DNA of 64,000 nucleotides, from assembly GCA_002269645.1 (NCBI GenBank), contig NIVC01003730.1, positions 1-64,000 on the forward strand, given 5' to 3'. This document shows positions 1,054 to 20,005 of this stretch, piece after piece. Source of the DNA: Macrostomum lignano (lineage: Eukaryota). The notes under the pieces are model-generated. The model did not search any database and was not told the origin of the DNA. It saw only the letters and a program-made list of their open reading frames with translations. The position numbers and the translations under genes were made by a program. Within the stretch, counting starts at the first letter, position 1, and the number at the start of each line of letters is the position of its first letter.

Positions 1054-1562
1054 CTTAAGTGCTAGAACTCAAGCTATTGGGCTTACATAAAAAATAAAAA
1101 TATGAAAAGAAAAAAATAGGCCTACTTTTTATTTTATAGAGAATTTTTTATAATTATACCTTTTATAACCATAGCATAGGCCTAGGGCTTTATTAATGGT
1201 TAGGCCTATAGAAAAAACAATAGAATTTTATCAATAACAAAATTTATTTATTTTTGTATCGATAACCATATTTTATATTTTTTCTTATAGTCTTAGACCT
1301 ATCTGTGACCAATATTTATAGCCAATAATTTTTTTAGTTAGTAATACTTCCTTAAACATTTTTTGCTATAATAATAGCCAATAATTTTTTTAGAGATTTT
1401 TTGCCTAGCAAAGTGCTACCAGCTAGCAATACTTAGGCCTTGTATATTATAGATTGAATATGCCTATTAGGACCTTTATTGGGAACTATTATAATTGTAA
1501 AAATATAGCTAGGAATAGTATTTTGTTGTTAGTGTAGAATACATCTAGGCCTATGGCATTCA

Positions 1563-1895
1563 ATGCTTATCAATTTATTTCTATTTTTTTCTCTTTTCTA
1601 TTATTTTCTTTCCTTTTTCTTTTTTTTCTTATTTTCTATTTTCCACTTTTTCCACTTTTTCCTTTTCTCTTTATTCTATCCTTTTTCTCTTTTCTATCTT
1701 AGTCTTTTTTCCTTTTTCTTTTCCCTTTTCCCTTTTCCCTTCTTCTCTCTTATCTTTCTTTTTCATTTTTCTTCTCTTATTTTATCTTTTTTCTTTCTTC
1801 CTCTTCTCCATTCTCTTTGCTCTTTTCTTTCTTTGCCTTTTCATTCTCCCTTTTTTCTCCCTTTTCACTTATTTTTCTTCTTCCCTTTTTTCTAG
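1563..1895 (+). repeat. Polypyrimidine low-complexity tract
   Basis: About 330 bp almost entirely T/C. Confidence 0.9.
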
Positions 1896-3040
1896 TAATC
1901 TTAAAGTAACAAAAATAATGAAATCTCCAATGTTTATCAATATATTTTTGAGAATAATGTGATCAGTAGATCAGCTTATCATTTGGTTCCCAAAAAGATT
2001 GGGTAGCAAAAGGCCCTAAATTATTTGTAGTCTAGCCTTCTTTGATGGTGGCAAATGCTAAATGGTTTCTTTTTTTAACTTTATCTTAACTTAAGCAATT
2101 GTCATCCCAACTATAATATATGTGCCATCAAACATCATTGTTGCTTGCTTTTAAATCTCAAGTCTTTTAAGTATTAAATGGCCATAGCCATATTTATATG
2201 TTTTTCTCAAAACCTATATTTTTAAGTTTTTATAGCTATATTATAGCTACAGTCCCCTTATATATTTAAGGCCTAAGACTAGGCCTAACTTTTGCAGGTA
2301 TTTTTGCAAATGTTTTAGCTATTTTTGTTGTATTATATATAAGAAGCCAAAAAAATCTTTGTCATAGAAATTAGTAAGATAAAAATATTTTGAAAGTTTT
2401 TAAAACAAACTTTTTACAAAATTGATCAATAGTGCCATATTGGGAAAACATATACAAAAGTGTAGATATTTAGGTAAACATTTTTTGTAAATTTTTTATT
2501 CCTTGACCACTTTTCAAAGGTGTCTTTTATTCAAGCAAATGAGATAACAAAGTAAAACATCTTCAATTCATAGCCATAATCAAACAAAAAGAAAAAACTG
2601 TCAAGAAAAAAATCAATTTTACAATTTACCCTTGGTCTAGCCAGTCTACCATGATTTTTGCCAGCTGGATTAGTTGAATATATTTTAGTATATTGTGGAG
2701 ATGCATAGGGATCTAGACCACAGAAACAATTAGGATCCTATCTCACTTTTCTATATACTTATACATTAAATACAAATCCCAATCTTACTCTCATAAGCCA
2801 AAAATCCCAGGATCCCAGCAAAAATTATTAATCCATTGAACATGACCAAGCATACACAGGGTACAGGCATTATTGATGACATTTTCTATTGTAATTTAGA
2901 GATTATCTTGTGCAGAGTGTCAGTCAGATTGTCATTGCATTATTTATCGATTATTGCCAACCATTGCTGCCAGTGACGTGTTAAAGAAAGCATTTACTCC
3001 TTTCTCTCTATCAGCAAGCCTTGCACTTTAAAGCCTTGAG

Positions 3041-5337
3041 ATGGCTCCTCCAAGCTTCAGCGATCTCAGCAAAGATGCCAACGATCTCTACAATAAAGAC
3101 TTCAATTTTGGCTCAGTCAAAGCCGAGCTAAAAACCAAAGCCCAGCTGTTGGACTCCGAATTCAAGTCTAGCGGCTCGCACGATATGGAAACTGGCCGGG
3201 CGGCTGCGGATGTTGAAGTTAAGCGATCGTTTAGAGACTACGGCATCACCCTGACTAATAAATGGAAAACCAGTAATGCCATTACAGCGGAGGTTGCCAT
3301 CGAAGACCGCTTAGCTAAGGGTCTAAAGAATTCATTCGAGATTAATTTTGAGCCCAACACAGGGAAACGTAGCGCCAAAGTTAAAACAGGATTTAAACGG
3401 GCCAATGTGAACACTGCGCTGGATTTGGAGTTTAAGACTAATTTTCCCACCGTACTGTCTAGCGCTGTGTTCGGCTATCAGAACTTCTTCGCCGGTGCCA
3501 GCGTTGGATTCGATACTGAAAGACAGAAACTGACCAAACTTAGCTACGGTGCGGCTTTTCAGGTCTGAGTCATCTCCTGAAGCTGCCGAACCCTCCTTGA
3601 ATACTGATTCTCTGGGGTGTCCAACCCCTCTGAATATTACTAGTAATTTCTCTCCCTGAAATACCTCAGGGATGCATCTGAAGCTATCATCCAACCTATC
3701 CATGAAGTACAGAGATGCATCTGAAGCTACCAACCCATCCCTGAAGTACAGAGATGCATCTGAAGCTATCATCCAACCCATCCCTGAAGTACAGAGATGC
3801 ATCTGAAGCTATCATCCAACCCATCCCTGAAGTACAGAGATGCATCTGAAGCTATCATCCAACCTATCCATGAAGTACAGAGATGCATCTGAAGCTATCA
3901 TCCAACCTATCCATGAAGTACAGAGATGCATCTGAAGACTGAAGCTACCAACCCATCCCTGAAGTACAGAGATGCATCTGAAGCTATCATCCAACCCATC
4001 CCTGAAGTACAGAGATGCATCTGAAGCTATCATCCAACCCATCCCTGAAGTACAGAGATGCATCTGAAGCTATCATCCAACCTATCCATGAAGTACAGAG
4101 ATGCATCTGAAGCTATCATCCAACCTATCCATGAAGTACAGAGATGCATCTGAAGCTATCATCCAACCTATCCATGAAGTACAGAGATGCATCTGAAGCT
4201 ACCAACCCATCCCTGAAGTACAGAGATGCATCTGAAGCTATCATCCAACCCATCCCTGAAGTACAGAGATGCATCTGAAGCTATCATCCAACCCATCCCT
4301 GAAGTACAGAGATGCATCTGAAGCTATCATCCAACCCATCCCTGAAGTACAGAGATGCATCTGAAGCTATCATCCAACCCATCCCTGAAGTACAGAGATG
4401 CATCTGAAGCTATCATCCAACCCATCCCTGAAGTACAGAGATGCATCTGAAGCTATCATCCAACCCATCCCTGAAGTACAGAGATGCATCTGAAGCTACC
4501 AACCCATCCCTGAAGTACAGAGATGCATCTGAAGCTATCATCCAACCTCTCCCTGAAGTACAGAGATGCAACTGAAGCTATCATCCAACCTCTCCCTGAA
4601 GTACAGAGATGCATCTGAAGCTACCAACCCATCCCTGAAGTACAGAGATGCATCTGAAGCTACCAACCCATCCCTGAAGTACAGAGATGCATCTGAAGCT
4701 ATCATCCAACCCATCCCTGAAGTACAGAGATGCATCTGAAGCTACCAACCCATCCCTGAAGTACAGAGATGCATCTGAAGCTATCATCCAACCTCTCCCT
4801 GAAGTACAGAGATGCATCTGAAGCTATCATCCAACCTCTCCCTGAAGTACAGAGATGCATCTGAAGCTATCATCCAACCTCTCCCTGAAGTACAGAGATG
4901 CATCTGAAGCTACCAACTCGTTCCTGAAGTACAGAGACATCCCTAATAAAAATAGAAACAAATTAGAATAGAAAGTCAATTGCTGCTCAAACCACACCTA
5001 CACGCAGGTGAAGGACCTGTCCCTGTACGCTGGAGTTGAGAACAGCAGCAACTATTGCGCTTCAGCTTATCACCGCCTGTCTCGTGGCCTGGAGGCGGGC
5101 CTGAAGCTGTGCTACTCAGGCTCCAGCCACGCCGCGGATCTGGGCGTAGCGGCCAAGTACCGATTAAACGATGGTAGCGCTTTTAAACTGCGCCTAAACA
5201 ATCGCAGCCTGTTGGGCTCGTCCTACAGTTTCCAGGTGCGCGACGGCTTCCGCGTGACAATGAGCAGCAATTTGGATTGTAAAAATCTTGGCGGCGGTGG
5301 CCACCAGCTGGGCTTGGCGTTCTGCTTCGAGCCTTGA
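3041..5337 (+). CDS. VDAC: Voltage-dependent anion channel (mitochondrial porin); exons 3041-3562 and 5008-5337, 283 aa
   Basis: MAPPSFSDLSKDANDLYNKDFNFG start and KLRLNNRSLLGSSY...GGHQLGLAFCFEP end are VDAC-like. Donor CAG|gtctga at 3563 and acceptor cacgcag| at 5007 are both phase 0. The joined length of 174+109=283 aa equals typical VDAC length. Confidence 0.95.
3665..4935. repeat. 43/40-bp minisatellite in the VDAC intron
   Basis: GAAGTACAGAGATGCATCTGAAGCTATCATCCAACCCATCCCT and a variant lacking 3 bp, about 30 copies. Confidence 0.95.
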
Positions 5338-6039
5338 TTTATTAGAATTTATAATTATTACTGAAAGTACTGGATTCAAAAGAAATTTAGGATATTTAAT
5401 TTTATGAGATAGCAAGTTAACACTACTCTTAGTACTGGCTTAAATTAGTAGTATATAAAAGTATGCACTTTACAGTTAGTTTGCTAACACAGCTCTAGAT
5501 CTCTATTATGATCTTTACTACTGTTTTTTTGTTAGTTTTCGTTAGTAGTATGCGAAAGAAGCTAGATTTTTCTTTATAATTATTTTACTATAAGCAACGA
5601 AAATGTTAATCCTACTATAGTAATATTATTATCCTGTTTAACTTTACTTTGCCAAGTTTTATTTAACTACCTGGCATTAGCACATTAATTTTCTGTTTGT
5701 CTGGCTCTTCTGCAACACGGCGCTCTTCATATAGATTATATGAAACAACTATTTATTGTTGCATTATAGTTTAAACTAAAGACTTTTTAGCTCTTAATTC
5801 TATTTGATAAAGAAGGACTAACTTTTTTTAAGAAAGACTGTTATAACATTGTTGCTAACCTAGCCATGTTTGAGTTAGGTTTCTCATTGATTTTCTCATT
5901 TGAGAGGTTTAAGAGTCCAGACAGCCTCTATCCCATAGGGGTAAAACTTTCCTTTCGGACAGTCTGTCTCAGTCGTAGGGGCGAGATTTCGGCGCTCGGA
6001 CAGTCTATCAAAAGCGGTGAGATTTCAAACAGTCTGCAC

Positions 6040-6950
6040 TTTATAGGGTTGAGATTTCAGACGGTCTATCCCATAGGGGTGAGATTTCAGACAGTCTGCA
6101 CTTTATAGGGTTGAGATTTCGGACGGTCTATCTCATAGGGGTGAGATTTCAGACAGTCCCCATTTGATAGGGTTGAAATTTTGGACAGTCTGCATTTGAT
6201 AGGGTTGAGATTTCGGACAGTCTGCATTTGATAGGGTTGAGATTTCGGACAGTCTGCATTTGATAGGGTTGAGATTTCGGACAGTCTGCATTTGATAGGG
6301 TTGAGATTTCGGACAGTCTGCATTTGATAGGGTTGAGATTTCGGACAGTCTGCATTTGATAGGGTTGAGATTTCGGACAGTCTGCATTTGATAGGGTTGA
6401 GATTTCGGACAGTCTGCATTTGATAGGGTTGAGATTTCGGACAGTCTGCATTTGATAGGGTTGAGATTTCGGACAGTCTGCATTTGATAGGGTTGAGATT
6501 TCGGACAGTCTGCATTTGATAGGGTTGAGATTTCGGACAGTCTGCATTTGATAGGGTTGAGATTTCGGACAGTCTGCATTTGATAGGGTTGAGATTTCGG
6601 ACAGTCTGCATTTGATAGGGTTGAGATTTCGGACAGTCTGCATTTGATAGGGTTGAGATTTCGGACAGTCTGCATTTGATAGGGTTGAGATTTCGGACAG
6701 TCTGCATTTGATAGGGTTGAGATTTCGGACAGTCTGCATTTGATAGGGTTGAGATTTCGGACAGTCTGCATTTGATAGGGTTGAGATTTCGGACAGTCTG
6801 CATTTGATAGGGTTGAGATTTCGGACAGTCTGCATTTGATAGGGTTGAGATTTCGGACAGTCTGCATTTGATAGGGTTGAGATTTCGGACAGTCTGCATT
6901 TGATAGGGTTGAGATTTCGGACAGTCTGCATTTGATAGGGTTGAGATTTC
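6040..6950. repeat. 32-bp minisatellite between VDAC and SH3BP5
   Basis: TGATAGGGTTGAGATTTCGGACAGTCTGCATT, near-identical from 6184 to 6950, degenerate on the left. Confidence 0.95.
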
Positions 6951-7128
6951 GGAAAAATCCCCATTTAAATCGGGCAAGTCTTCATTTAGGACAGAGATTT
7001 CAAGCTATATTTGTTGCACAGGGCGGGAGTTGGAATCTCAGTTTCACTATGCAACATTGCAGCATCAATAAGCCATACCAGAGGAGACACAGCGAGCCCA
7101 CGAGGCCTGAGCAGACCAGACAGACGCC

Positions 7129-7791
7129 ATGCCAGCCTCCGCTCCGACATCCCCTGCTCTGCCGTCGCCTTCGCTGCACTCGCCGACCCCGTCTGTTTCT
7201 TCATTATCCTCTCGCGTGTCCGCCGAGCTCGAACGGTTGAACTTGTCCGCCCAGCAGCTGAACTCGGCCGAGACCGACCTGACCGAGGCCCGCGCCGAGT
7301 TCCGGCGCCGCCAATCGGCCGGCCTGGAGGCCATGACGGCGGCCCGTGTAGCGGCCGGTCCAAGCTGTATCGAAGCGGCCCGGCCGGCCTACGAAGCCAG
7401 GCGGCGTTGCCAGCTGACCCAGTTGGAGGCGCGAGCCGCCGCGGCTAGATTTCTGCGCCAAGCCTCGCCAACATCCTCGGCCGAGCATCAGCGCCTGGCT
7501 AGACGATGCCACGAGCTCGAAGCCGCCGCGGCCCGACTTGAACGATCGGTGCGCGCCTCGGTGGCCCGTCGGGCCAAGCCGTATTTCGACGCTTGCGAGC
7601 GGCAGCGCCGCCTGCTAGAAGAGCAGAAGGCCCGGGTGGACACGCTAGAAGAGAAGCGGCGCATCTGCAAGCGGGTTTACCAGGAAACCATGGCCGCTTT
7701 AGAGGCCATCAGCGAGGAAGTGCACTCCGTTAGGAAGACCGCCGCCGCCGCTGCTACTGCCACTCCTCCTGCTGAGGGCGGCAACTCCTGA
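7129..7791 (+). CDS. SH3BP5: SH3 domain-binding protein 5-like (Rab11 GEF family), single exon, 220 aa, internally shortened
   Basis: RVSAELERLN...ETDLTEARAEFR, ARPAYEARR, AKPYFD and LEAISEEVH match remembered SH3BP5 coiled-coil motifs (RIQGELEKLN, KPYWEAR, KPYFE, LEMISDEIH). Confidence 0.8.
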   Translation: MPASAPTSPALPSPSLHSPTPSVSSLSSRVSAELERLNLSAQQLNSAETDLTEARAEFRRRQSAGLEAMTAARVAAGPSCIEAARPAYEARRRCQLTQLEARAAAARFLRQASPTSSAEHQRLARRCHELEAAAARLERSVRASVARRAKPYFDACERQRRLLEEQKARVDTLEEKRRICKRVYQETMAALEAISEEVHSVRKTAAAAATATPPAEGGNS

Positions 7792-7867
7792 TGTCTGATG
7801 CTGATGCTTTGATGCTGGAGAATAATGGAGTCTTTTAATGTCACGGTGAGTCTGGTGTCCGAGTGTG

Positions 7868-9086
7868 GCATGGGATCAGTGAGGGATGGGATCAGTGTGG
7901 GATAGGATCAGTATGGGATGGGATCAGTATGGGATGAGACCAGTGTGAGATAGGATCAGTGTGGGATGGGATCAGTGTGGGATGGGATCAGTGTGGGATA
8001 GGATCAGTGTGGGATGGGATCAGTGTGGGATAGGATCAGTATGGGATGGGATCAGTATGGGATGGGACCAGTGTGAGATAGGATCAGTGTGGGATGGGAT
8101 CAGTGTGGGATGGGATCAGTGTGGGATGGGATCAGTGTAAGATGGGATCAGTGTGGGATGGGATCAGTGTGAGATGGGATCAGAGTGGGAAAGGATCAGA
8201 GTGGGATAGGATCAGTGTGGGATGGGATCAGTGTGGGATGGGATCAGTGTGGGATGGGATCAGTGTAAGATGGGATCAGTGTGGGATGGGATCAGTGTGG
8301 GATGGGATCAGTGTGGGATAGGATCAGTGTGGGATAGGATCAGTGTGGGATGGGATCAGTATGGCATGGGATCAGTATGGGATGGGACCAGTGTGGGATG
8401 GGATCAGTGTGAGATGGGATCAGTGTGAGATGGGATCAGTGTGGGGTGGGATCAGAGTGGGATGGGATCAGTGTGGGATGGGATCAGAGTAGGATGGGAT
8501 CAGTGTGGGATGGGATCAGAGTGGGATGGGATCAGAGTGGGATGGGATCAGAGTGGGATGGCATCAGTGTGGGATGGGATCAGAGTGGGATGGCATCCGT
8601 GTGGGATGGTATCAGTGTGGGATGGGATCAGTGTGGGATGGGATCAGAGTGGGATGGCATCAGTGTGGGATGGTATCAGTGTGGGATAGGATCAGTGTGG
8701 GATGGCATCAGTGTGGGATGGCATCAGTGTGGGATGGGATCAGAGTGGGATGGGATCAGAATGGGATGGGATCAGTGTGGGATGGGATCAGTGCGGGATG
8801 GGATCAGTGTGGGATGGGATCAGTGTGGGATGGGATCAGAGTGGGATGGCATCCGTGTGGGATGGTATCAGTGTGGGATGGGATCAGTGTGGGATGGCAT
8901 CAGTGTGGGATGGCATCAGAGTGGGATGGCATCAGTGTGGGATGGGATCAGAGTGGGATGGCATCAGTGTGGGATGGGATCAGAGTGGGATGGCATCAGT
9001 GTGGGATGGTATCAGTGTGGGATAGGATCAGTGTGGGATGGCATCAGTGTGGGATGGGATCAGAGTGGGATGGGATCAGTGTGGGA
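7868..9086. repeat. 16-bp minisatellite downstream of SH3BP5
   Basis: GGGATCAGTGTGGGAT with variants. Confidence 0.95.
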
Positions 9087-9851
9087 AGTCGAAAAGTCGC
9101 GTTACTAAATTAATCTGATTATGAAGACAATAATGTAATGCAGGATTCAAGCTCAAACTCAATCAATGCACCGTTTAAAATTGGTTTCAGATCGCAATTA
9201 GCTCAACTGGTTCGAAATCCGACTCTGCATCTTGAACGAAATCGATGCCAGCTGAATGATTTTCTATAGTCTGACCCGCAATTTTGCAACACTGTCTTTT
9301 AGTTTTTTGTTTTGTATGAAAAAATATCAGTTTATTGCATGAATTCGTGTGCTATATTTATATTATCTATAATCATTTATTGTGCTAGCTTGCGTTTAGT
9401 TTGTAACATTGACGCTTTTATTGCCTATCAGTTTGGATGGCATGTTTTTGTTAATTTAAGTCTTTTATTATGTCATTTTAGGTTTACCTAAATTTCGCAA
9501 TTTTTGTCAATCTTACTGTACTTTTATTTATGACTGTGCATGTACTTTTGCCGCCGAGGCTTGAAGATAAATTTCGAATTTTGCTCGCTATCGCTGGATA
9601 CGCGCCAGCTGTCTGCTCTGCAAAATTTGCTGTTTTGTGTTTTTTGCTTTTTGGAAATTAAACCGCTCGCGCTGACAACACACGATTGAATTGCGAAAAT
9701 ATGCTTTTATACAATATGAAGCGCTGGCCCGTTCTCACCTTGTTGTCATGACAACGGGACCGATGAGCCATTGATTTTATTATATAATATACTTTGCTGA
9801 CTTTGACGTTGCTGGTGTTAGTTTCTGGGTGTCTGTTTTGTCGTTTCTGCC

Positions 9852-9898
<47 letters not shown>

Positions 9899-10015
9899 TT
9901 CTGTCTGTCTGTCTGTCTGTCTGTCATAGTGTCTATCTCTCTGTCTGTCTGTCTGTCTTTTTGTCTGTCTGTCTGTCTGTCTGTCATAGTGTCTATCTCT
10001 CTGTCTGTCTGTCTT

Positions 10016-10070
<55 letters not shown>

Positions 10071-10100
10071 TTCTGTGTCTGTCTTTCTGCCTACTTGCCT
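9852..10100. repeat. (TGTC)n microsatellite directly upstream of ZPR1
   Basis: Interrupted TCTG runs ending about 30 nt before a ctaatttcag acceptor-like site. Confidence 0.95.
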
Positions 10101-10143
10101 GTCCGTCACCGAGTACCACCGCTAATTTCAGCGCTGAGCCATC

Positions 10144-13100
10144 ATGAGCGACCTCGCCGAGCGCGCCGATGCCCAGGCGCAGCAGCCGCTGTTTCCCGGC
10201 CTGGACCCAGACGAACTGCAGGTGACGGAGATGCAGTCGCTATGCATGAACTGCCACAGCCAGGGCGTCACCAAGCTGCTGCTCACTCGCATTCCCTATT
10301 TCAAAGAGGTCGTCGTATCCAGCTTTGACTGTCCCGACTGCGGCCACCAGAGCCGCAGCACCGACCACGCGGAACGAATCCAAGACTACGGAGTCGAGTT
10401 CAAGCTCCGAGTCAGCAAGCCGAGCGATCTCAATCGGAAACTGGTCCGGGCGCCCGGCTCGGAGATTCGCCTGCCCGAGCTCGATTCGGTTTTTCCCGGC
10501 AGTGAGGCCTCGGTCAGCACGGTGGAGGGCGCATTGACTGACGTGCTGGACAACCTGCGCTCCGCCCTGGCCTCCGCGGCCACCTCTGCGGGTCCCGACG
10601 GAGTTGATCGGCTGGCAGCTTTTATTAACAAAATGCAGGGCATGATCGAGGCTGAGAAGTGAGTCTGGGAGCTGTCTGTTCACAATCTACCTGTCTGTTT
10701 ACACATCTGACCGTCTGTTCACAATCTACCTGTCTGTTCACACGTCTGACCGTCTGTTCACAATCTACCTGTCTGTTCACACATCTAACTGTCTGTTCAC
10801 AATCTACCTGTCACATCTGTTCACAATCTACCTTTCTGTTCACACATCTGACCGTCTGTTCACAATCTACCTGTCTTTCACAATCTCCCTGTCGGCCAGC
10901 CCCAGCTTCACTCTTGTCCTGCGCGATCCCAGCGGCAACAGTTTCTTAGAAAACCCGTCCGCCCCGGCCGCCGATCCCTGCCTGACCGTCCGACGCTTCC
11001 AGCGCACCCGTGAAGAAGACGAAGCTCTCGGCATTACGCCCGCCGATGCCGAGGCCGGAACCAATGGCAACGCTTCCAGTGTCGTTGCTAATGGCGACGC
11101 TGACGGTGCGGCTGCGGCGACCGGCTCCGCTAGTGAGGAGTTTGATCGATACGGCGAAGTGTTGAATTTTCAGGTGAGTAAACTCAGTAGTATGTATCGT
11201 ATTTAAGCTTGTGTATTAACCCTGACGTGCCACTAATCAGAATAGAGTTGCCATTTTCACATCTGAGATGCCACTAATCAGAATAGAGTTCCATTTTCAT
11301 ATCTGAGATGCCACTAATCAGAATAGAGTTGCCATTTTCACATCTAAGATGCCACTAATCAGAATAGAGTTGCCATTTTCACAACTGAGATGCCACTAAT
11401 CAGAATAGAGTTGCCATTTTCATATCTGAGATTCAGAATAGAGTTGCCATTTTCACATCTGAGATGCCACTAATCAGAAAGAGTTGCCATTTTCATATCT
11501 GAGATGCCACTAATCAGAATAGAGTTTCCATTTTCATATCTGAGATGCCACTAATCAGAATAGAGTTGCCATTTTCATATCTGAGATGCCACTAATCAGA
11601 ATAGAGTTGCCATTTTCATATCTGAGATGCCACTAATCAGAATAGAGTTGCCATTTTCATATCTGAGATGCCACTAATCAGAATAGAGTTGCCATTTTCA
11701 TATCTGAGATGCCACTAATCAGAATAGAGTTGCCATTTTCATATCTGAGATGCCACTAATCAGAATAGAGTTGCCATTTTCACATCTGAGATGCCACTAA
11801 TCAGAATAGAGTTGCCATTTTCACATCTGAGATGCCACTAATCAGAATAGAGTTGCCATTTTCACAACTGAGATGCCACTAATCAGAATAGAGTTGCCAT
11901 TTTCATATCTGAGATGCCACTAATCAGAATAGAGTTGCCATTTTCATATGAGATGCCACTAATCAGAATAGAGTTGCCATTTTCACATCTGAGATGCCAC
12001 TAATCAGAATAGAGTTGCCATTTTCACAACTGAGATGCCACTAATCAGAATAGAGTTGCCATTTTCATATCTGAGATGCCACTAATCAGAATAGAGTTGC
12101 CATTTTCACATCTGAGATGCCACTTATTAGTATAGAGTTGCCAGGAAACAGGATTCATTATCTATCAAATATTTCATATGATATGTTTCGATGTTTAAAA
12201 TCACTTTCAAACAGTGTCATTCCTAGAAAAGACTGGGCTAGAAAAAGACGACAATAGCTCATAAAATTGCGCAATATACCACTGAAGATTGCCCCTACAA
12301 TTATCGCCCTTTGCTCTCCCCGTCTTTCCGTCTATAGTTTAATTTAGTTATCGATTTTTGTCTACGCAAGTTTTTGTACGCAGTAGGGTTTGGGGAGGTG
12401 GGGGTTTTGGGGGGGGGGGCAGGTTGGGGGTGGGTGCGCTGGCCCCCTATGCCTATATAGATATTCAGTCTCTCCTTCTCTTTCTCCTGTCTCTCTGTCC
12501 CTTTCGTTTTTTATTCATTGATTTTTTTGAAGAAAAACATCTCAACAGCAGACTTGGTTATGCTTCTTCTGTATTTTCAACAGGGTAAGTGGCTGATAGG
12601 TGATAAAATCTGTAATTTGTATTTTATTTATTGTTAGCAACATTAGTGATTAGTGAGTGAGGCACTTCAGTGATTAGTGAGTGAGGCACTTCAGTGATTA
12701 GTGAGTGAGGCACTTCAGTGATTAGTGAGTGAGGCACATCAGTGATTAGTGTGTGAGGCACTTCAGTGATTAGTGAGTGAGGCACTTCAGTGATTAGTGA
12801 GTGAGGCACTTCAGTGATTAGTGTGTGAGGCACATCAGTGATTAGTGAGTGAGGCACATCAGTGATTAGTGTGTGAGGCACATCAGTGATTAGTGAGTGA
12901 GGCACATCAGTGATTAGTGAGTGAGGCACTTCAGTGATTAGTGTGTGAGGCACTTCAGTGATTAGTGAGTGAGGCACATCAGTGATTAGTGAGTGAGGCA
13001 CTTCAGTGATTAGTGTGTGAGGCACATCAGTGATTAGTGAGTGAGGCACTTCAGTGATTAGTGTGTGAGGCACATCAGTGATTAGTGAGTGAGGCACATC

Positions 13101-15715
13101 AGTGATTAGTGTGTGAGGCACATCAGTGATTAGTGAGTGAGGCACTTCAGTGATTAGTGAGTGAGGCACTTCAGTGATTAGTGTGTGAGGCACATCAGTG
13201 ATTAGTGAGTGAGGCACATCAGTGATTAGTGAGTGAGGCACTTCAGTGATTAGTGTGTGAGGCACTTCAGTGATTAGTGAGTGAGGCACTTCAGTGATTA
13301 GTGAGTGAGGCACTTCAGTGATTAGTGAGTGAGGCACTTCAGTGATTAGTGTGTGAGGCACTTCAGTGATTAGTGAGTGAGGCACTTCAGTGATTAGTGA
13401 GTGAGGCACTTCAGTGATTAGTGAGTGAGGCACTTCAGTGATTAGTGAGTGAGGCACATCAGTGATTAGTGAGTGAGGCACTTCAGTGATTAGTGTGTGA
13501 GGCACATCAGTGATTAGTGAGTGAGGCACATCAGTGATTAGTGTGTGAGGCACATCAGTGATTAGTGAGTGAGGCACTTCAGTGATTAGTGAGTGAGGCA
13601 CTTCAGTGATTAGTGTGTGAGGCACATCAGTGATTAGTGAGTGAGGCACATCAGTGATTAGTGAGTGAGGCACTTCAGTGATTAGTGTGTGAGGCACTTC
13701 AGTGATTAGTGAGTGAGGCACTTCAGTGATTAGTGAGTGAGGCACTTCAGTGATTAGTGAGTGAGGCACTTCAGTGATTAGTGTGTGAGGCACTTCAGTG
13801 ATTAGTGAGTGAGGCACTTCAGTGATTAGTGAGTGAGGCACTTCAGTGATTAGTGAGTGAGGCACTTCAGTGATTAGTGAGTGAGGCACTTCAGTGATTA
13901 GTGAGTGAGGCACATCAGTGATTAGTGAGTGAGGCACTTCAGTGATTAGTGAGTGAGGCACTTCAGTGATTAGTGAGTGAGGCACTTCAGTGATTAGTGT
14001 GTGAGGCACTTCAGTGATTAGTGAGTGAGACACTTCAGTGATTAGTGAGTGAGGCACATCAGTGATTAGTGAGTGAGGCACTTCAGTGATTAGTGAGTGA
14101 GGCACATCAGTGATTAGTGTGTGAGACACTTCAGTGATTAGTGAGTGAGGCACTTCAGTGATTAGTGTGTGAGACACTTCAGTGATTAGTGAGTGAGGCA
14201 CATCAGTGATTAGTGAGTGAGGCACATCAGTGATTAGTGATTGAGGCACATCAGTGATTAGTGAGTGAGGCACACATCAGTGATTAGTGAGTGAGGCACA
14301 TCAGTGATTAGTGAGTGAGGCACATCAGTGATTAGTGTGTGAGGCACATCAGTGATTAGTGAGTGAGGCACTTCAGTGATTAGTGAGTGAGGCACTTCAG
14401 TGATTAGTGAGTGAGGCACTTCAGTGATTAGTGAGTGAGGCACTTCAGTGATTAGTGAGTGAGGCACATCAGTGATTAGTGAGTGAGGCACTTCAGTGAT
14501 TAGTGAGTGAGGCACTTCAGTGATTAGTGAGTGAGGCACTTCATTGATTAGTGAGTGAGGCACTTCAGTGATTAGTGAGTGAGGCACTTCAGTGATTAGT
14601 GTGTGAGACACTTCAGTGATTAGTGAGTGAGGCACATCAGTGATTAGTGTGTGAGGCACATCAGTGATTAGTGAGTGAGGCACATCAGTGATTAGTGAGT
14701 GAGGCACTTCAGTGATTAGTGAGATATTGGTGAGGTGTAAGCCAATTTAACAAGAATTAAAGTACATTAGTTGTGGTTAAAGGTAGTATCGCATTAAAAA
14801 GCTGTTAATCTGTTAATCTGTAAACTACTAATCTGTTCTTCATCGGTAGTCTAAAACGAGCAAGCAACGAAACCTTACCGTCTTCCCCAGGTAAACTGCC
14901 CCAACTGCTCCCAGCCAACCGAGTCGCGCATGAAGCTCGTCCGCGTGCCCTACTTCAAAGAGGTCGTCGTCATGGCAACCACATGCGAAGCCTGCGGTCA
15001 CAAGGACAGCAGCGTCAAATGCGGCGGCGGAATCGAACCCCAGGGCGTCCGGCTTGAACTCGCCGTCCAGGAGCCCTTCGATCTGTCTCGCGACGTGCTC
15101 GTGTCCGACTCCTGTATGATCTGCATTCCCGAGCTCGAGTTCGAGACTGAGCAGGGCAGTCTGGGCGGCAAATTCACCACCGTGGAGGGGCTCCTGCTGG
15201 CCATTCGGTAAGGAACTGCCCTGCATCACTTTTCCTGCATTACCCTCCCTGAATCCCCCTCCCTACATCACCCTTACTGCATCCATGCATCACCTCCCTG
15301 CTCTCATCCCTGAATCCCTGAATCATAAGTGAGCGGAGATTGGGCAGGACTGCCTTAGGACACAGCCTTACCGCAACCTTACTAACCAGTTGCTATGCTC
15401 CTCCCCCCGCCCAGCGACAGCCTGGCCGAGACGAATCCCTGCCTGCTCGGCGACGCCACCGAGACGCCTCGATTTGGCGAATTTCTCGCTCGCATCACCG
15501 CTCTGGCAACCGTCGTCGAAGAGCCGGACGCAACCCAGCCTCGATTCCGCCTCATCTTGGACGATCCGGCTGGCAATTCCTACGTGCAGAATCTGTGCGC
15601 CCCCGACCCGGATCCGCAGCTGCAGTGCCAGAAATACGACCGGTCAGAGGAGCAGAACGAGAGCCTCGGACTGACCGACATGAAGACCGAGAACTACGCA
15701 GAGCCGAATAGCTGA
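10144..15715 (+). CDS. ZPR1: Zinc finger protein ZPR1; exons 10144-10658, 10900-11173, 14891-15207, 15415-15715, about 468 aa
   Basis: Two C4 zinc fingers (CMNC...CPDC; CPNC...CEAC) and two LxLxDPxGNS motifs. All three GT-AG introns have matching phases (2, 0, 2), and there is a branch point actaac at 15381. Confidence 0.95.
10672..10890. repeat. About 40-bp tandem repeat filling ZPR1 intron 1
   Basis: CTGTCTGTTCACAATCTACCTGTCTGTTCACACATCTGAC, about 5 copies. Confidence 0.85.
11228..12142. repeat. 41-bp minisatellite, ZPR1 intron 2 (5' part)
   Basis: TGAGATGCCACTAATCAGAATAGAGTTGCCATTTTCA(C/T)ATC, about 22 copies. Confidence 0.95.
12645..14722. repeat. 24-bp minisatellite, ZPR1 intron 2 (3' part)
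   Basis: GTGATTAGTG(A/T)GTGAGGCAC(T/A)TCA, about 85 copies. Confidence 0.95.
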
Positions 15716-15837
15716 ACTGCTTTGTTGGCCTATCTGGTTTTTTTTCTCTGTTCGCCTCGCTGCCTACTGTCACCGTTTCTTTTCGTTTTGATTTTGAAAT
15801 TTGCAGATGTCTGTGCGCACACATAAGGGTGGCAATA

Positions 15838-17022
15838 TCCAAACGGAATTCCCCCTCAGAAGCAGAACAGTCCAAACGGAATTCCCCCCTCAGAAACAGA
15901 ACAGTCCAAACGGAATTCCCCCCTCAGAAACAGAACAGTCCAAACGGAATTCCCCCTCAGAAACAGAACAGTCCAAACGGAATTCCCCTCAGAAACAGAA
16001 CAGTCCAAACGGAATTCCCCCTCAGAAACAGAACAGTCCAAACGGAATTCCCCCTCAGAAACAGAACAGTCCAAACGGAATTCCCCCTCAGAAACAGAAC
16101 AGTCCAAACGGAATTCCCCCTCAGAAACAGAACAGTCCAAACGGAATTCCCCCTCAGAAACAGAACAGTCCAAACGGAATTCCCCCTCAGAACAGAACAG
16201 TCCAAACGGAATTCCCCCTCAGAAACAGAACAGTCCAAACGGAATTCCCCCCTCAGAAACAGAACAGTCCAAACGGAATTCCCCCCTCAGAAACAGAACA
16301 GTCCAAACGGAATCCCCCCTCAGAAACAGAACAGTCCAAACGGAATTCCCCCCTCAGAAACAGAACAGTCCAAACGGAATTCCCCCTCAGAAACAGAACA
16401 GTCCAAACGGAATTCCCCCTCAGAAACAGAACAGTCCAAACGGAATTCCCCCCTCAGAAACAGAACAGTCCAAACGGAATCCCCCTCAGAAACAGAACAG
16501 TCCAAACGGAATTCCCCCCTCAGAAACAGAACAGTCCAAACGGAATTCCCCCCTCAGAAACAGAACAGTCCAAACGGAATCCCCCTCAGAAACAGAACAG
16601 TCCAAACGGAATTCCCCCTCAGAAACAGAACAGTCCAAACGGAATTCCCCCTCAGAAACAGAACAGTCCAAACGGAATTCCCCCTCAGAAACAGAACAGT
16701 CCAAACGGAATCCCCCCTCAGAAACAGAACAGTCCAAACGGAATTCCCCCCTCAGAAACAGAACAGTCCAAACGGAATTCCCCCCTCAGAAACAGAACAG
16801 TCCAAACGGAATCCCCCTCAGAAACAGAACAGTCCAAACGGAATTCCCCCCTCAGAAACAGAACAGTCCAAACGGAATTCCCCCTCAGAAACAGAACAGT
16901 CCAAACGGAATTCCCCCCTCAGAAACAGAACAGTCCAAACGGAATTCCCCCTCAGAAACAGAACAGTCCAAACTGAATTCCCCCCTCAGAAACAGAACAG
17001 TCCAAACTGAATTCCCCCCTCA
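15838..17022. repeat. 32-34-bp minisatellite between ZPR1 and NASP
   Basis: CAGAAACAGAACAGTCCAAACGGAATTC(n)T with a variable C run. Confidence 0.95.
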
Positions 17023-17443
17023 GAAATAAAAAAATTGCATCAGCATCAGCAGTTTTCAAAACTTTGCCTGGCAACCCGAAAACCTGAATTTGATTTAATT
17101 CAATTCCGCTATCTTTTATCCTGAATATTATTTTCTTTAAACCAACTTTCTGAGCTCCCAGTCCGGCCCCGCCTTGCATTTTTCTTGCCTGCAATGTTGG
17201 GTCAGTAGTAGGATTGGATCAATAAAGTAAAGAATTGGCAAGAGGCTTATTGAGGTGGAACGATTTTATTTTAATGAAATTTGTTTTTTCTTTGATTAAC
17301 TTTACTTACAGTAGTATTCAACAGTATCTTCTGTTCTTATACTTGCAATCGAATTATTCTCTGTTTCAGCCCAGTGCGCCGGCCCGAGACACATCAGCAT
17401 AATCATAATAAATCATAATTTTTAATAACAGACTACTCTGATC

Positions 17444-19054
17444 ATGACAGCCGCTGAGACTACTGCTGAGCAGGAGACTACTGTTACTACTACTGCTGCT
17501 GCTACTGACAGTAGTCAGCAAGAGCCGGCCGCAGCCGCTGAGCAGCCGATGGACGCCGAGTCAATCGAGGCCCTGCTAGGCCAGGGCAAGCGGGACTATT
17601 ACTGCGGCGAATATGTCAAAGCTGTCAGTCAGCTGCAGCGGGCCTGCGAAGCCCTGGCCGCTAAGCACGGCGATCTGGCTGACGAGATTGCCGAGCCCTA
17701 CCTGCTGTACGGCCGCGCCCTGCTGGAGGTGGCCAGGATGGAGGCCGACGTTCTCGGCGGAGCCCTCGAAGGCGTACCGGCCGAGGAGGCCAAGACAGAC
17801 GGTGATGAGGCAAAAAAGACATCACAGATTGATGAGGAAGAAAAAGAAGCCGATGCGATGATTGAAAAAGACTCGCTAACCGAGGAGGAGAAGGAGAAAA
17901 TCTCCGAGCAGGTCATCGACGCGATGACTGATGGCGACGGCGAGGAGGCGAAGGTGGCCGAGGAGAAGGACGCTGGAGAGGACAAAGAGGAGAAGCAGAA
18001 GCCGGCAGAGACGGTCGAGCCGGAGGCTGGCAAGGCCGACGACAACAAGGAGGCCGAAACAGCGGCGGAAGGCGAGGAAGCCGACGGCGAAGGCGAGGCA
18101 GACGGCGGCGAGGAGGGCGAAGAAGGCGACGAAGAGGAGGAGGAGGAGGATGAGGAAGAGGAGGAAGTTGGCAACCTGCAGATCGCCTGGGAGGTGCTGG
18201 AGGTGGCCCGCAATGTGTTCGAGAGGCGGCAGGACTGGGCCCGCGTGGCCGACTGCCACATGTGCCTGGCCGAGGTGGGCATGGAGAAGGAGGACTGGGC
18301 GCAGGCCGAGGAGGACTTCCTGGCCGCGGTGAAGGTGTACACCGACTCGGTGCGGGTTGACAAAGGCGACAGGCGGCTGGCAACGGCGCAGTTCCAGCTG
18401 GCCGTGGCCTGTCTGGCTGGCAAGAAATTCTCCGAGGCAAAGCGCGCCTTCGACGACAGTGCCGCCCAGTTGGCCGCCAGGGCCGCCCAGCTGGAGGCCG
18501 CTGAAGGCGACGCCGAAGCGACAGCGGCTGAGCGTCGCGAACTTGACGAGCTGATCAGCGAACTGCGCCAGCGAATGTCGGAGGTTGACGAGGAGCGGCT
18601 GGATTTTGAAGCCGCCAAGCAGCAGCTCCGGTCCGGTGCCGCCAGCATCGCCGGTGCCTTCGCTGACGCCGCCGCCGCCATCGGTGCCGTCTCCACCGAC
18701 GCCACCGCCGCCGCTGCCCAGTCCTCCGCCAATGTCAACGACATCTCCGGGCTGGTGCGCAAGAAGCGACCAGCGCCGACGCCCGCCACCGAGCTGGCCG
18801 CCGAGGTCGCTAGCAGCGACGCCAGCGCCAAGGATGACGCGGCTTCGAATGGCGCCCCGGCCGCCGCCACCGCCGCCGCGGAGGTGAACGGCTCCGGCAA
18901 GGTGACCGGAGCGTCGCCCAACAAGCGGCGTCGAACCCTCGTCGGATCCGGCGAAGTCAACGGAGTCGGCGCCGCTGAGAATGGCGGAGACACCGCCAAG
19001 GAGGTGGAGCCGATGGACCAGCAGGAGGAGGCGGCCGTGGCGCCGGCTGTTTAG
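17444..19054 (+). CDS. NASP: NASP / N1-N2 histone chaperone (SHNi-TPR), single exon, 536 aa
   Basis: GKRDYYCGEY...LYGRALLEVAR TPR1/2, an acidic insertion, LQIAWEVLEVAR and LAEVGMEKEDW TPRs, and a C-terminal NLS LVRKKRP. Confidence 0.9.
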   Translation: MTAAETTAEQETTVTTTAAATDSSQQEPAAAAEQPMDAESIEALLGQGKRDYYCGEYVKAVSQLQRACEALAAKHGDLADEIAEPYLLYGRALLEVARMEADVLGGALEGVPAEEAKTDGDEAKKTSQIDEEEKEADAMIEKDSLTEEEKEKISEQVIDAMTDGDGEEAKVAEEKDAGEDKEEKQKPAETVEPEAGKADDNKEAETAAEGEEADGEGEADGGEEGEEGDEEEEEEDEEEEEVGNLQIAWEVLEVARNVFERRQDWARVADCHMCLAEVGMEKEDWAQAEEDFLAAVKVYTDSVRVDKGDRRLATAQFQLAVACLAGKKFSEAKRAFDDSAAQLAARAAQLEAAEGDAEATAAERRELDELISELRQRMSEVDEERLDFEAAKQQLRSGAASIAGAFADAAAAIGAVSTDATAAAAQSSANVNDISGLVRKKRPAPTPATELAAEVASSDASAKDDAASNGAPAAATAAAEVNGSGKVTGASPNKRRRTLVGSGEVNGVGAAENGGDTAKEVEPMDQQEEAAVAPAV

Positions 19055-19689
19055 CTGGCTGGCTATCAAAAAATTGAGCGAAAATTTTAACAGCCAATTA
19101 TTTATTTCTCAAATATAACAAAACACTCCGCATTTTCTCCCTATCGATAGTGAAATCCTGCCGTGCATTTTTAAAAAATAATAAATACTGGAAAACACTG
19201 GGATGACGTAACCAGAAATTCCACCGGTTTGTCGTAAATACATTTTATTATTAACTATTTTTCGCGCGTATTTAACTTCACGGTTTTCTGTCAGTCATCT
19301 ACACTCTCAGTTTTTTAATACTATCTTACTAATAGTAGCGTCAATTGTCTGACTGGTTTTTTATTCCTAAATTTAAAAAGTCTTACTATTTCTATATTAC
19401 TGTTAGTAATACTAGCAAACCTCTGTCGATTTTTTCTGTCCATCGAAGTTTGGCTAAATTTTGTCATTCATATTTTCTAATTATTGTTCTGGGCCGTTGT
19501 GTTTCTGTTTTTATTAATGTTTCAAGTTTAAAATTTATAATAATAACTTCACGCTGTCCCCTGTCTCAAGTCGTTTGCATGTGTGGCGCCTTCCAAACAG
19601 TTGCATTGTTTAATGATTTCTTCTATCAGCTAATTCTTTTCCAGACTACAGACATTGATTGAAGTGGGCGCTGCTTCATGACAGTCGGG

Positions 19690-19707
19690 GAGACAGACAG
19701 ACAGACG

Positions 19708-19777
<70 letters not shown>

Positions 19778-19922
19778 TAGACGGCAGACAGACAGACAGA
19801 CAGACAGACGGATAGACGGCAGACAGACAGACAGACAGACAGACAGACGGATAGACGGCAGACAGACAGACAGACAGACAGACGGATAGACGGCAGACAG
19901 GCAGACAGACAGACAGACAGGC

Positions 19923-19970
<48 letters not shown>

Positions 19971-20005
19971 GGATAGACGGCAGACAGACAGACAGACAGG
20001 CAGGC

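What the first reader, a model, noticed from the sequence alone, without database searches (positions are those of the whole stretch)
3015..19054. Candidate operon: VDAC-SH3BP5-ZPR1-NASP, co-oriented, each with an unpaired acceptor just upstream of its ATG
Seen: four housekeeping genes lie head-to-tail on the + strand. Acceptor-like sites precede each start: ctctctatcag| at 3014; ttgcacag| at 7020 and cattgcag| at 7070; ctaatttcag| at 10131, 12 nt before the ATG; ctgtttcag| at 17369 and aataacag| at 17431, 12 nt before the ATG. No TATA box or obvious partner donor was seen. Without the tandem arrays the spacers are only about 0.5-0.9 kb. Established: flatworms including Macrostomum use SL trans-splicing and have polycistronic clusters. 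Inference: this is an operon resolved by SL trans-splicing whose intercistronic DNA has been inflated by minisatellites. ZPR1 and NASP are both proliferation-associated genes, relevant to neoblasts.
Basis: partly seen in the sequence, partly recalled or inferred. Interest (0 to 1): 0.7.

Follow-up and report, generated by a model that had tools for sequence, protein, structure and literature searches.

The report
Known-type flatworm operon: VDAC-SH3BP5-ZPR1-NASP
Four housekeeping genes of the flatworm Macrostomum lignano lie head-to-tail and are very probably read as one long RNA that is cut into single messages by spliced-leader trans-splicing, but this kind of repeat-swollen operon, and apparently this very locus, is already in the published genome annotation, so it is ordinary.

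Summary
The window is Macrostomum lignano Mlig_3_7 contig NIVC01003730.1. The four co-oriented genes are real: VDAC, an SH3BP5-domain gene, ZPR1 and NASP. The acceptor-like AGs exist, although two coordinates are off (7020 is 7021; 7070 is 7062). Without tandem arrays the stop-to-ATG spacers are 855, 889 and 539 bp.

The operon reading is largely backed by public data.
- GenBank protein PAA79748.1, from a near-identical copy, is reproduced exactly by splicing VDAC exon 2 (donor after 5235) to the AG at 7062. So that acceptor is used, and a primary transcript runs from VDAC across the 32-bp array to SH3BP5.
- VDAC shares a transcriptional-unit name with ZPR1 (Mlig021030) and with NASP (Mlig031262).
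- Published tables flag M. lignano VDAC and NASP transcripts as TRANSSPLICED.
- VDAC transcripts of other macrostomid samples begin with the spliced leader.

Spliced-leader use at SH3BP5 and ZPR1, and a single promoter, could not be tested. Published expression argues against simple co-regulation: after irradiation NASP falls about 3.5-fold while VDAC does not change.

Arrays are not special to the spacers. Three of the four introns are 81-92% array.

Repeat-inflated operons in this species were described in 2021. Verdict: real, probably an operon, already known. Interest is low.

The parts
2334..2343 (+). TATA-like element (TATATATAAG) in the AT-rich (32% GC) DNA upstream of VDAC. It is a candidate promoter for the whole unit. 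This is inferred only.
   Evidence: no gene lies upstream in the window
3013..3014 (+). Acceptor AG 26 nt before the VDAC ATG, behind a strong polypyrimidine tract (14 of 15). It is the candidate spliced-leader (SL) site of the first gene.
   Evidence: The M. lignano VDAC transcript RNA1509_202 is flagged TRANSSPLICED. VDAC transcripts of three other macrostomid sample sets start with 16-31 nt of the SL. The hexamer TATCAG does not fit YTNCAG.
3041..5337 (+). VDAC gene. The coding sequence is 3041-3562 + 5008-5337 (283 aa). The intron 3563-5007 is 88% a 43-bp array (3667-4937).
   Evidence: The protein is identical to PAA88560.1 / PAA88565.1.
5236..5241 (+). Internal donor GTGCGC inside VDAC exon 2. 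A deposited isoform uses it to splice to the AG at 7062.
   Evidence: PAA79748.1 (252 aa, ending ...SYSFQ|HQ*) is reproduced exactly.
6018..6953 (+). 32-bp minisatellite (29 copies) in spacer 1. Its copy number differs among the assembly copies: spacer 1 measures 1312, 1602, 1696 and 1791 bp.
7061..7062 (+). Acceptor AG (TTGCAG, fits YTNCAG) 66 nt before the SH3BP5 ATG. It is shown to be a used splice acceptor and is the probable SL site.
   Evidence: The AG at 7021 is a poorer alternative (GCACAG, with an upstream ATG behind it).
7129..7791 (+). SH3BP5-domain gene: one exon, 220 aa.
7846..7851 (+). Consensus donor GTGAGT 55 nt after the SH3BP5 stop and 11 nt before the 16-bp array. With TTTCAG ending at 9190 it could make the array a 3'UTR intron. 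This is untested.
7862..9086 (+). 16-bp minisatellite (77 copies) in spacer 2.
9657..9662 (+). ATTAAA, the only canonical poly(A) hexamer in spacer 2. It is the candidate 3'-end signal of SH3BP5.
9852..10089 (+). (TCTG)n microsatellite. It forms a pyrimidine-rich tract that ends 42 nt before the ZPR1 acceptor.
10130..10131 (+). Acceptor AG (TTTCAG, fits YTNCAG) 12 nt before the ZPR1 ATG. It is the probable SL site.
   Evidence: It is identical in all copies. There is no direct RNA evidence here.
10144..15715 (+). ZPR1 gene: 4 coding exons, 468 aa. Intron 1 is 92% array and intron 2 is 81% array (41-bp and 24-bp arrays).
15838..17026 (+). 33-bp minisatellite (36 copies) in spacer 3.
17221..17226 (+). 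AATAAA after the array. It is the candidate ZPR1 poly(A) signal and would leave about 125 nt to the acceptor at 17369.
17368..17369 (+). Acceptor AG (TTTCAG, fits YTNCAG) 74 nt before the NASP ATG. It is the favoured SL site. The alternative AG at 17430-17431 (TAACAG) lies 12 nt before the ATG.
   Evidence: NASP genes Mlig028032.g2, Mlig018651.g2 and Mlig031262.g4 are all published as TRANSSPLICED.
17444..19054 (+). NASP gene: one exon, 536 aa.
19180..19185 (+). AATAAA after NASP. It is the candidate 3' end of the unit. Combined with the acceptor at 17369 it predicts about 1.84 kb, the published length of Mlig018651.g2 (1843 nt).
   Evidence: inference

Best explanation
This is a spliced-leader (SL) resolved polycistronic transcription unit (an 'operon') of Macrostomum lignano, of the kind already described genome-wide for this species.

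**Proposed mechanism**
1. RNA polymerase II starts in the AT-rich DNA upstream of VDAC.
2. It reads through VDAC, SH3BP5, ZPR1 and NASP, including the minisatellite arrays in the introns and spacers.
3. Each upstream message is cleaved and polyadenylated.
4. The single 35-nt Macrostomum SL is trans-spliced onto the next message. The acceptors end at 3014 (VDAC), 7062 (SH3BP5), 10131 (ZPR1) and 17369 (possibly also 17431) for NASP.

**Shown**
- Gene identities, order and strand.
- Repeat-adjusted spacers under 1 kb.
- The AG at 7062 is a used acceptor.
- RNA continuity from VDAC exon 2 to 7062.
- Published SL status of M. lignano VDAC and NASP transcripts.

**Inferred**
- SL addition at 7062 and 10131.
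- The poly(A) sites.
- Continuity of one precursor over all four genes.
- The promoter position.

The unit need not be purely single-promoter. The expression data suggest extra control downstream.
For: 1. **Source and copies.** The window is GCA_002269645.1 contig NIVC01003730.1. Near-identical copies on NIVC01000181.1 and NIVC01000618.1 keep the same gene order. All splice and poly(A) contexts are 100% identical in them, so annotation evidence from those copies transfers to the window.
2. **Bridging isoform.** PAA79748.1 (BOX15_Mlig031262g2, 252 aa) equals VDAC 3041-3562 + 5008-5235 + 7063-7071. Its gene range ends exactly at the equivalent of window position 7071. The Mlig_3_7 annotation is built only from RNA data: StringTie/TACO assemblies plus mapped de novo transcripts.
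3. **Shared unit names.** VDAC is Mlig021030g1/g5 and ZPR1 is Mlig021030g3/g7. VDAC is Mlig031262g2 and NASP is Mlig031262.g4. The prefix names a 95%-identity cluster of assembled 'transcriptional units', which the authors say are often precursors holding several genes.
4. **Published SL flags.** VDAC2 transcript RNA1509_202 and NASP genes Mlig028032.g2, Mlig018651.g2 and Mlig031262.g4 are flagged TRANSSPLICED.
5. **Relatives.** VDAC transcripts from SRR28338164-166, SRR7428098/99 and JGI 3300033524 begin with 16-31 nt of the SL.
6. **Operational criteria.** Co-oriented neighbours, a downstream gene that is trans-spliced, and a repeat-adjusted distance under 1 kb. The distances here are at most 855, 889 and 539 bp.
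7. **Acceptor quality.** 7062, 10131 and 17369 fit the published YTNCAG motif. At these three sites the AUG that ends the SL opens only a 3-, 2- or 11-codon ORF that stops before the real ATG.
8. **Promoter hints.** There are no TATA-like octamers in spacers 2 and 3. One lies upstream of VDAC.
Against: - No SL-containing read or transcript was seen for SH3BP5 or ZPR1. M. lignano RNA-seq contigs are not in the searchable collections.
- Published steady-state levels are uncoupled. VDAC logCPM goes from 8.21 to 8.16 at 72 h after irradiation (logFC about 0, not significant). NASP goes from 4.62 to 2.76 (logFC -1.8). VDAC is also about 4- to 12-fold more abundant.
- NASP is in the complete stringent-neoblast list. 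VDAC, ZPR1 and SH3BP5 are not.
- Raw spacers of 1.7-2.4 kb contain AT-rich non-repeat stretches of 32-36% GC that could hold internal promoters. About 60% of trans-spliced M. lignano genes are not in operons.
- Assembled transcriptional units can merge neighbouring genes through read-through. They can also merge them through multi-mapped reads on repeats; mapping allowed 1000 hits per read.
- The window's own NASP may belong to a different unit name (Mlig028032 or Mlig018651) than VDAC.
Confidence: 0.66

Rival explanations
1. Hybrid operon. The four genes are co-transcribed, but one or more internal promoters also feed the downstream genes. The likeliest position is in front of NASP or ZPR1, active in neoblasts. 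Cell-type-specific termination or read-through after VDAC would have the same effect. Either way, output per gene is uncoupled.
For: - VDAC is unchanged by irradiation and is far more abundant. NASP drops 2.7- to 3.5-fold and is a stringent neoblast gene.
- Non-repeat AT-rich segments of 340-765 bp precede the downstream acceptors.
- The evidence for RNA continuity is compatible with this reading.
Against: - No transcription-start data are available.
- No TATA-like element lies in spacers 2 and 3.
- Different mRNA stability, or mixing of signals from several gene copies, could produce the same expression differences.
Confidence: 0.3
2. Four independent genes. Each gene has its own promoter in its spacer. 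The spliced leader only trims each gene's own 5' outron. The shared orientation is chance, and the joint transcriptional units reflect low-level read-through.
For: - Most trans-spliced M. lignano genes (about 60%) are not in operons.
- Raw spacers are 1.7-2.4 kb, and the authors report that regions up to 2 kb upstream of the start site were sufficient for the promoters they tested.
- Expression is uncoupled.
- Four genes sharing a strand has a 1-in-8 chance.
Against: - A deposited isoform splices VDAC exon 2 to the SH3BP5-proximal acceptor.
- VDAC shares unit prefixes with ZPR1 and with NASP.
- No canonical poly(A) hexamer lies between any stop codon and the following array. Upstream transcripts therefore probably run to within about 125-450 nt of the next acceptor.
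Confidence: 0.2
3. Cis-splicing. The acceptors mainly serve ordinary splicing from upstream exons, giving chimeric or bicistronic VDAC-SH3BP5-type mRNAs or 5'UTR exons. They are not spliced-leader sites.
For: - The only directly documented use of 7062 is a cis-splice from the donor after 5235.
- In that copy (L008) no separate SH3BP5 gene is called.
- A GTGAGT at 7846 could pair with downstream acceptors.
Against: - The cis isoform truncates VDAC by 33 residues, replacing them with two (HQ) before a stop, so it looks like a minor by-product.
- On NIVC01000181.1 both full-length VDAC (283 aa) and a separate SH3BP5 gene (220 aa) are annotated.
- NASP is published as trans-spliced.
- No GTRAG donor lies in spacer 3.
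Confidence: 0.07

Closest known systems
Macrostomum lignano operons / multi-gene transcriptional units (Wudarski et al. 2017, PMC5730564; Ustyantsev & Berezikov 2021, PMC8629364)
   Same: - Same species and same genome assembly.
- Co-oriented neighbouring genes and a single 35-nt spliced leader (SL).
- YTNCAG acceptors.
- Spacers swollen by tandem repeats that fall under 1 kb once the repeats are subtracted.
- Conserved housekeeping and neoblast genes.
- Four genes is within the reported range of 2-9.
   Different: Nothing substantive. SL use at two of the three downstream genes was not verified here. This particular cluster is not discussed by name in any paper found. It appears only through annotation names.
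Caenorhabditis elegans SL2-type operons
   Same: - Polycistronic precursor RNA.
- 3'-end formation of the upstream gene is coupled to trans-splicing of the downstream one.
- If the poly(A) hexamers at 17221 and 9657 are used, the distance from poly(A) site to acceptor would be about 125-450 nt. The nematode mode is about 100 nt (background knowledge).
   Different: - M. lignano has one spliced leader and no specialised SL2.
- Stop-to-start spacers are kilobases long and half or more minisatellite.
C. elegans 'hybrid operons' with internal promoters (from my own knowledge of the nematode literature; not checked here)
   Same: This would explain why a downstream gene (NASP) is regulated differently from the first gene (VDAC).
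   Different: No internal promoter has been demonstrated here.
Single-SL operons of tunicates (Ciona, Oikopleura) and the few polycistrons of Schistosoma mansoni
   Same: One spliced leader serves both single-gene and operon transcripts.
   Different: Tunicate operons have almost no intercistronic DNA. Here the spacers are 1.7-2.4 kb.

Membership tests
M. lignano operon (operational definition of PMC8629364) | Immediately adjacent genes on the same strand, not interrupted by a gene on the other strand | tested here: met
   The only minus-strand ORFs in the spacers lie inside tandem arrays. Public gene calls on the copies show the same order.
M. lignano operon (operational definition of PMC8629364) | Repeat-adjusted intergenic distance below 1000 bp | tested here: met
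   855, 889 and 539 bp from stop to ATG after removing TRF arrays. Distances between transcript ends must be shorter still.
M. lignano operon (operational definition of PMC8629364) | The downstream gene of each pair is SL trans-spliced | tested here: inconclusive
   - NASP: published as TRANSSPLICED for all three named copies.
- SH3BP5 and ZPR1: only motif-level support (TTGCAG at 7062, TTTCAG at 10131), plus proof that 7062 is a used acceptor.
- No SL-bearing transcript of either gene could be retrieved.
SL-resolved operon (general, mechanistic definition) | A polycistronic primary transcript spans the genes | tested here: inconclusive
   - VDAC to the 5' end of SH3BP5: shown through the deposited cis-spliced isoform PAA79748.1.
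- VDAC with ZPR1, and VDAC with NASP: inferred from shared transcriptional-unit prefixes.
- No RNA reads were inspected directly.
SL-resolved operon (general, mechanistic definition) | One promoter upstream of the first gene and no independent capped starts for the downstream genes | not testable with these tools
   Only hints are available: a TATA-like element at 2334 and none in spacers 2 and 3. Published expression of VDAC and NASP is uncoupled, which speaks against strict single-promoter control.
SL-resolved operon (general, mechanistic definition) | The organism has an SL RNA, and the first gene or outron carries it | tested here: met
   - The SL sequence is published.
- M. lignano VDAC transcript RNA1509_202 is flagged TRANSSPLICED.
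- Eight transcript contigs of VDAC homologues were retrieved from other macrostomid samples. Seven of them start with SL suffixes of 16-31 nt.
- There is no SL RNA gene in the window itself.

The most novel reading that the evidence does not exclude
The cluster could be a leaky or hybrid operon in which the kilobase-scale minisatellite arrays are not neutral filler. Sitting in the 3'UTR and intercistronic RNA, they would modulate polymerase read-through, 3'-end choice or trans-splicing efficiency in a cell-type-specific way. That would let a ubiquitously expressed first gene (VDAC) and a neoblast-restricted last gene (NASP) share one transcription unit.
Probability: 0.1. Interest if true: 0.5.

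Novelty: already known. Interest (0 to 1): 0.15.

Why it matters
If true it adds one more four-gene example to the roughly 10,000 M. lignano genes already assigned to operons. It changes nothing conceptually.

Its modest value is practical.
- It gives explicit coordinates for the likely trans-splice acceptors and 3'-end signals on this contig.
- It warns that database models fusing SH3BP5 with ZPR1, or truncating VDAC, are by-products of the operon structure.
- It flags a locus where a housekeeping gene and a stringent neoblast gene share a unit. That makes it a convenient test case for how expression is uncoupled within flatworm operons.

Tried and rejected
1. **M. lignano transcript contigs carrying the spliced leader.** Exact-protein look-ups returned only the genome assembly.
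2. **Homology searches.**
   - A concatenated VDAC+SH3BP5 query was swamped by low-complexity words and returned five hits.
   - The ZPR1 search returned no macrostomid transcript. The two best Logan hits (L006, L007) carry no spliced leader and come from other animals.
   - A trimmed SH3BP5/ZPR1/NASP query found no macrostomid relatives.
3. **JGI metagenome scans.** An SL-ZPR1 junction pattern gave 0 hits. ZPR1 relatives gave one hit at 35% identity, which is irrelevant.
4. **UniProt fusion proteins SH3BP5+ZPR1 (A0A1I8GCI3, A0A1I8HMY1).** I rejected these as evidence. Their junctions fall inside the ZPR1 coding sequence (…EEVHS|AQQPLF, …EEVHS|RADAQ), not at 10131, so they look like frame-preserving ab initio models from the older assembly.
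5. **Supplements of four papers.** I searched them for Mlig021030, ZPR1 and SH3BP5. There was nothing for those names. Several of the tables were truncated when stored.
6. **Comparing assembly copies for conservation of the signals.** This has no power, because all contexts are 100% identical.
7. A fuzzy-regex script timed out. The bacterial promoter/terminator scanner was not used because it does not apply to a eukaryote.

Full report
**Where the window comes from.** The NASP reading frame of the window (17444-19054) is found at exactly the same coordinates on contig NIVC01003730.1 of GCA_002269645.1, the Macrostomum lignano Mlig_3_7 assembly. The SH3BP5 protein is encoded identically twice on NIVC01000181.1. 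The whole cluster recurs on NIVC01000618.1.

**Checking the observation.** I built gene models from the sequence.
- VDAC: 3041-3562 + 5008-5337 (283 aa; Porin_3 E=3e-58).
- SH3BP5-domain protein: 7129-7791 (220 aa; PF05276 E=3e-31).
- ZPR1: four exons between 10144 and 15715 (468 aa; jr-ZPR1 E=3e-64; 100% identical over 98% of its length to a M. lignano UniProt entry).
- NASP: 17444-19054 (536 aa). Pfam is weak, but the solved human sNASP structure 7v6p matches at E=7e-31, and insect NASP/N1-N2 proteins match at E=1e-19 to 1e-23.

All four are on the + strand. The acceptor-like AGs end at 3014, 7021 (reader: 7020), 7062 (reader: 7070), 10131, 17369 and 17431. The stop-to-ATG spacers are 1791, 2352 and 1728 bp, of which 855, 889 and 539 bp lie outside tandem arrays.

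The acceptors are weak evidence taken alone. The published trans-splice motif [T/C]TNCAG occurs 3.45 times per kb in this window. A hit within 75 nt of an ATG is therefore expected about 23% of the time, and for all three downstream genes about 1% of the time. Only 7062, 10131 and 17369 fit that motif.

**What is already published.** Ustyantsev & Berezikov (PMC8629364) report the following.
- There is a 35-nt spliced leader (SL).
- 30% of genes are trans-spliced and 15% are in operons.
- Operons hold two to nine genes.
- Subtracting repeats from intergenic distances reveals a peak near 100 bp between trans-spliced neighbours. [quoted passage not shown]
- Their working definition of an operon is co-oriented neighbours, a downstream gene that is trans-spliced, and a repeat-adjusted distance under 1 kb.

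Wudarski et al. (PMC5730564) built the annotation purely from RNA data. They call the assembled transcripts 'transcriptional units' and note that these are often precursors holding several genes. They cut them into genes at SL and poly(A) peaks. Units that cluster at 95% identity share a name prefix.

**Evidence bearing on this locus.** The strongest item is GenBank protein PAA79748.1 (BOX15_Mlig031262g2, 252 aa) on NIVC01000618.1. It is identical to VDAC up to …SYSFQ and then ends HQ*. I reproduced it exactly, in both the window and the copy, by joining three pieces:
- VDAC exon 1;
- exon 2 up to an internal donor (…TTCCAG|GTGCGC, exon end 5235);
- the nine bases CAT CAA TAA that follow the AG at 7062.

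The deposited gene range ends at the base equivalent to window position 7071. Two things follow. The AG at 7062 is a used acceptor, and a primary transcript runs from VDAC across the 32-bp array to the 5' end of SH3BP5. All these sequence contexts are 100% identical in every copy.

Further items point the same way.
- VDAC is Mlig021030g1/g5 and ZPR1 is Mlig021030g3/g7 on NIVC01000181.1.
- VDAC is Mlig031262g2, and the 2018 neoblast table lists NASP as Mlig031262.g4. The NCBI tags come from annotation version 1 and the table from version 3. Even so, two genes independently known to be neighbours sharing one of tens of thousands of prefixes is not plausibly a coincidence.
- Published tables flag the M. 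lignano VDAC2 transcript RNA1509_202 and NASP genes Mlig028032.g2, Mlig018651.g2 and Mlig031262.g4 as TRANSSPLICED.
- Transcript contigs of VDAC homologues (59-77% identical) from SRR28338164-166, SRR7428098/99 and JGI sample 3300033524 begin with 16 to 31 nt of the SL. This agrees with the reported conservation of the SL across Macrostomum.

**What could not be shown.** I found no SL-bearing transcript of SH3BP5 or ZPR1. M. lignano RNA-seq contigs are evidently not in the searchable collections, and no macrostomid orthologue of these genes was retrieved. Promoters and transcription starts cannot be tested with these tools.

**Evidence against a simple single-promoter operon.** The numbers below come from the eLife 2016 expression table.

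| Gene | logCPM at 0 h | logCPM 72 h after irradiation | logFC |
|---|---|---|---|
| VDAC | 8.21 | 8.16 | about 0, not significant |
| NASP | 4.62 | 2.76 | -1.8 |

In the 2018 re-analysis NASP goes from 6.18 to 4.52. NASP is in the complete list of 357 stringent neoblast clusters; VDAC, ZPR1/ZNF259 and SH3BP5 are not. So the steady-state output of the first and last genes is uncoupled. That calls for an internal promoter, cell-type-specific read-through, or different mRNA stability. Signal mixing among gene copies is a caveat.

**Refining the 'inflated intercistronic DNA' idea.**
- Tandem arrays cover 25% of the window and 50% of the cluster.
- They fill introns even more than spacers. The VDAC intron is 88% array, ZPR1 intron 1 is 92% and intron 2 is 81%. 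The spacers are 52-69%.
- Each non-coding interval has its own private repeat unit (43, 32, 16, 4, 39, 41, 24 and 33 bp).
- No AATAAA or ATTAAA lies between any stop codon and the array that follows it.
- The only canonical hexamers outside the arrays lie after them. ATTAAA is at 9657. AATAAA is at 17221 and at 17407; the second lies downstream of the 17369 acceptor. Spacer 1 has none at all.

The arrays are therefore probably transcribed as part of the upstream gene's 3'UTR or precursor. If those signals are used, the true distance from poly(A) site to acceptor would be about 125-450 nt. This is inference. Array copy number differs among the assembly copies (spacer 1 is 1312, 1602, 1696 or 1791 bp) while the flanks are identical.

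**Choosing among acceptors.** At 7062, 10131 and 17369 the AUG that ends the SL would open only a 3-, 2- or 11-codon ORF that stops before the true ATG. At 7021 and 3014 it would open 73- and 39-codon overlapping ORFs. At 17431 it would extend NASP in frame by five residues. Together with the motif fit, this favours 7062, 10131 and 17369. The published length of Mlig018651.g2 (1843 nt) matches 17370 to about 19212, that is, the acceptor at 17369 plus the AATAAA at 19180. This too is inference.

**Surroundings.**
- Upstream of VDAC the window has 3 kb of 32% GC DNA with no gene and a TATA-like element at 2334.
- In the copy on NIVC01000618.1 the nearest upstream gene call is a BTB_2 gene on the opposite strand, about 7.5 kb away.
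- Downstream of NASP there is no recognisable + strand gene for about 19 kb. Next come a teneurin-EGF-like ORF (-), a tubulin gene (+), NAGLU (-), a DXD glycosyltransferase (+) and an SCA7-domain gene (-).

The cluster therefore holds exactly these four genes.

**Verdict.** The operon interpretation is probably right (about two-thirds confidence for a polycistronic, SL-resolved unit) but unproven for two of the three junctions, and published expression data complicate it. Both the phenomenon and apparently this locus are already in the public annotation and literature. Novelty is 'already known' and interest is low.

Noticed in passing
L009 = NIVC01000181.1:197489-218754 (window equivalent 12645-14723): On NIVC01000181.1 two VDAC-SH3BP5-ZPR1 copies face each other. 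The turn-around point lies inside the 24-bp array of ZPR1 intron 2, and both ZPR1 models are 'partial'. The two arms differ in the length of the 32-bp array (spacer 1 is 1602 vs 1696 bp). This is probably an assembly artefact or a collapsed duplicate rather than a real palindrome.
   Followed up: partly
window 3563-17026: Every non-coding interval of the cluster carries its own private minisatellite (units of 43, 32, 16, 4, 39, 41, 24 and 33 bp). Three of the four introns are 81-92% array; the 207-bp ZPR1 intron 3 has none. Arrays cover 50% of the cluster and 17% of the rest of the window.
   Followed up: partly
window 9852-10089 and 19691-20403: (TCTG)n just upstream of the ZPR1 acceptor and its reverse complement (AGAC)n downstream of NASP bracket ZPR1-NASP as an inverted pair. 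The first gives a 238-nt pyrimidine-rich run that ends 42 nt before the acceptor at 10131.
   Followed up: no
window 7846-9190: A perfect GTGAGT donor 55 nt after the SH3BP5 stop, together with a TTTCAG acceptor ending at 9190, brackets the 16-bp array. The array may be a 3'UTR intron, matching the way the other arrays sit in introns.
   Followed up: no
window 7063-7071, 10132-10137, 17370-17402: At the three motif-matching acceptors, the AUG that ends the spliced leader would open only 3-, 2- or 11-codon mini-ORFs that stop before the real start codon. At the alternative AG at 17431 it would be in frame with NASP.
   Followed up: partly
UniProt A0A1I8GCI3 (P0002), A0A1I8HMY1 (P0011), A0A1I8F5P2 (P0005): Database proteins fuse SH3BP5 to ZPR1 through junctions inside the ZPR1 coding sequence. 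They look like gene-prediction artefacts of the operon layout in the older assembly.
   Followed up: yes
window 12385-12440: A G-rich tract (runs of up to 11 G) lies in the non-repeat island of ZPR1 intron 2, between the 41-bp and 24-bp arrays.
   Followed up: no
window 20627-20702: A (GA)n microsatellite of about 75 bp lies downstream of the (AGAC)n array.
   Followed up: no
window 31546-57942: Other genes in the window, in mixed orientation: a 1019-aa ORF with a teneurin-like EGF domain (-, 31546-34605); a single-exon tubulin (+, 38426-39817); NAGLU exons (-, 43197-48051); a DXD-motif glycosyltransferase (+, 51790-52356); and an SCA7-domain gene (-, 56764-57942).
   Followed up: partly
L015 = JGI 3300033524 contig Ga0316592_1030621: An environmental JGI data set contains a VDAC transcript that carries 31 nt of the Macrostomum spliced leader. 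A macrostomid (or a close relative with the same leader) was therefore present in that sample.
   Followed up: no
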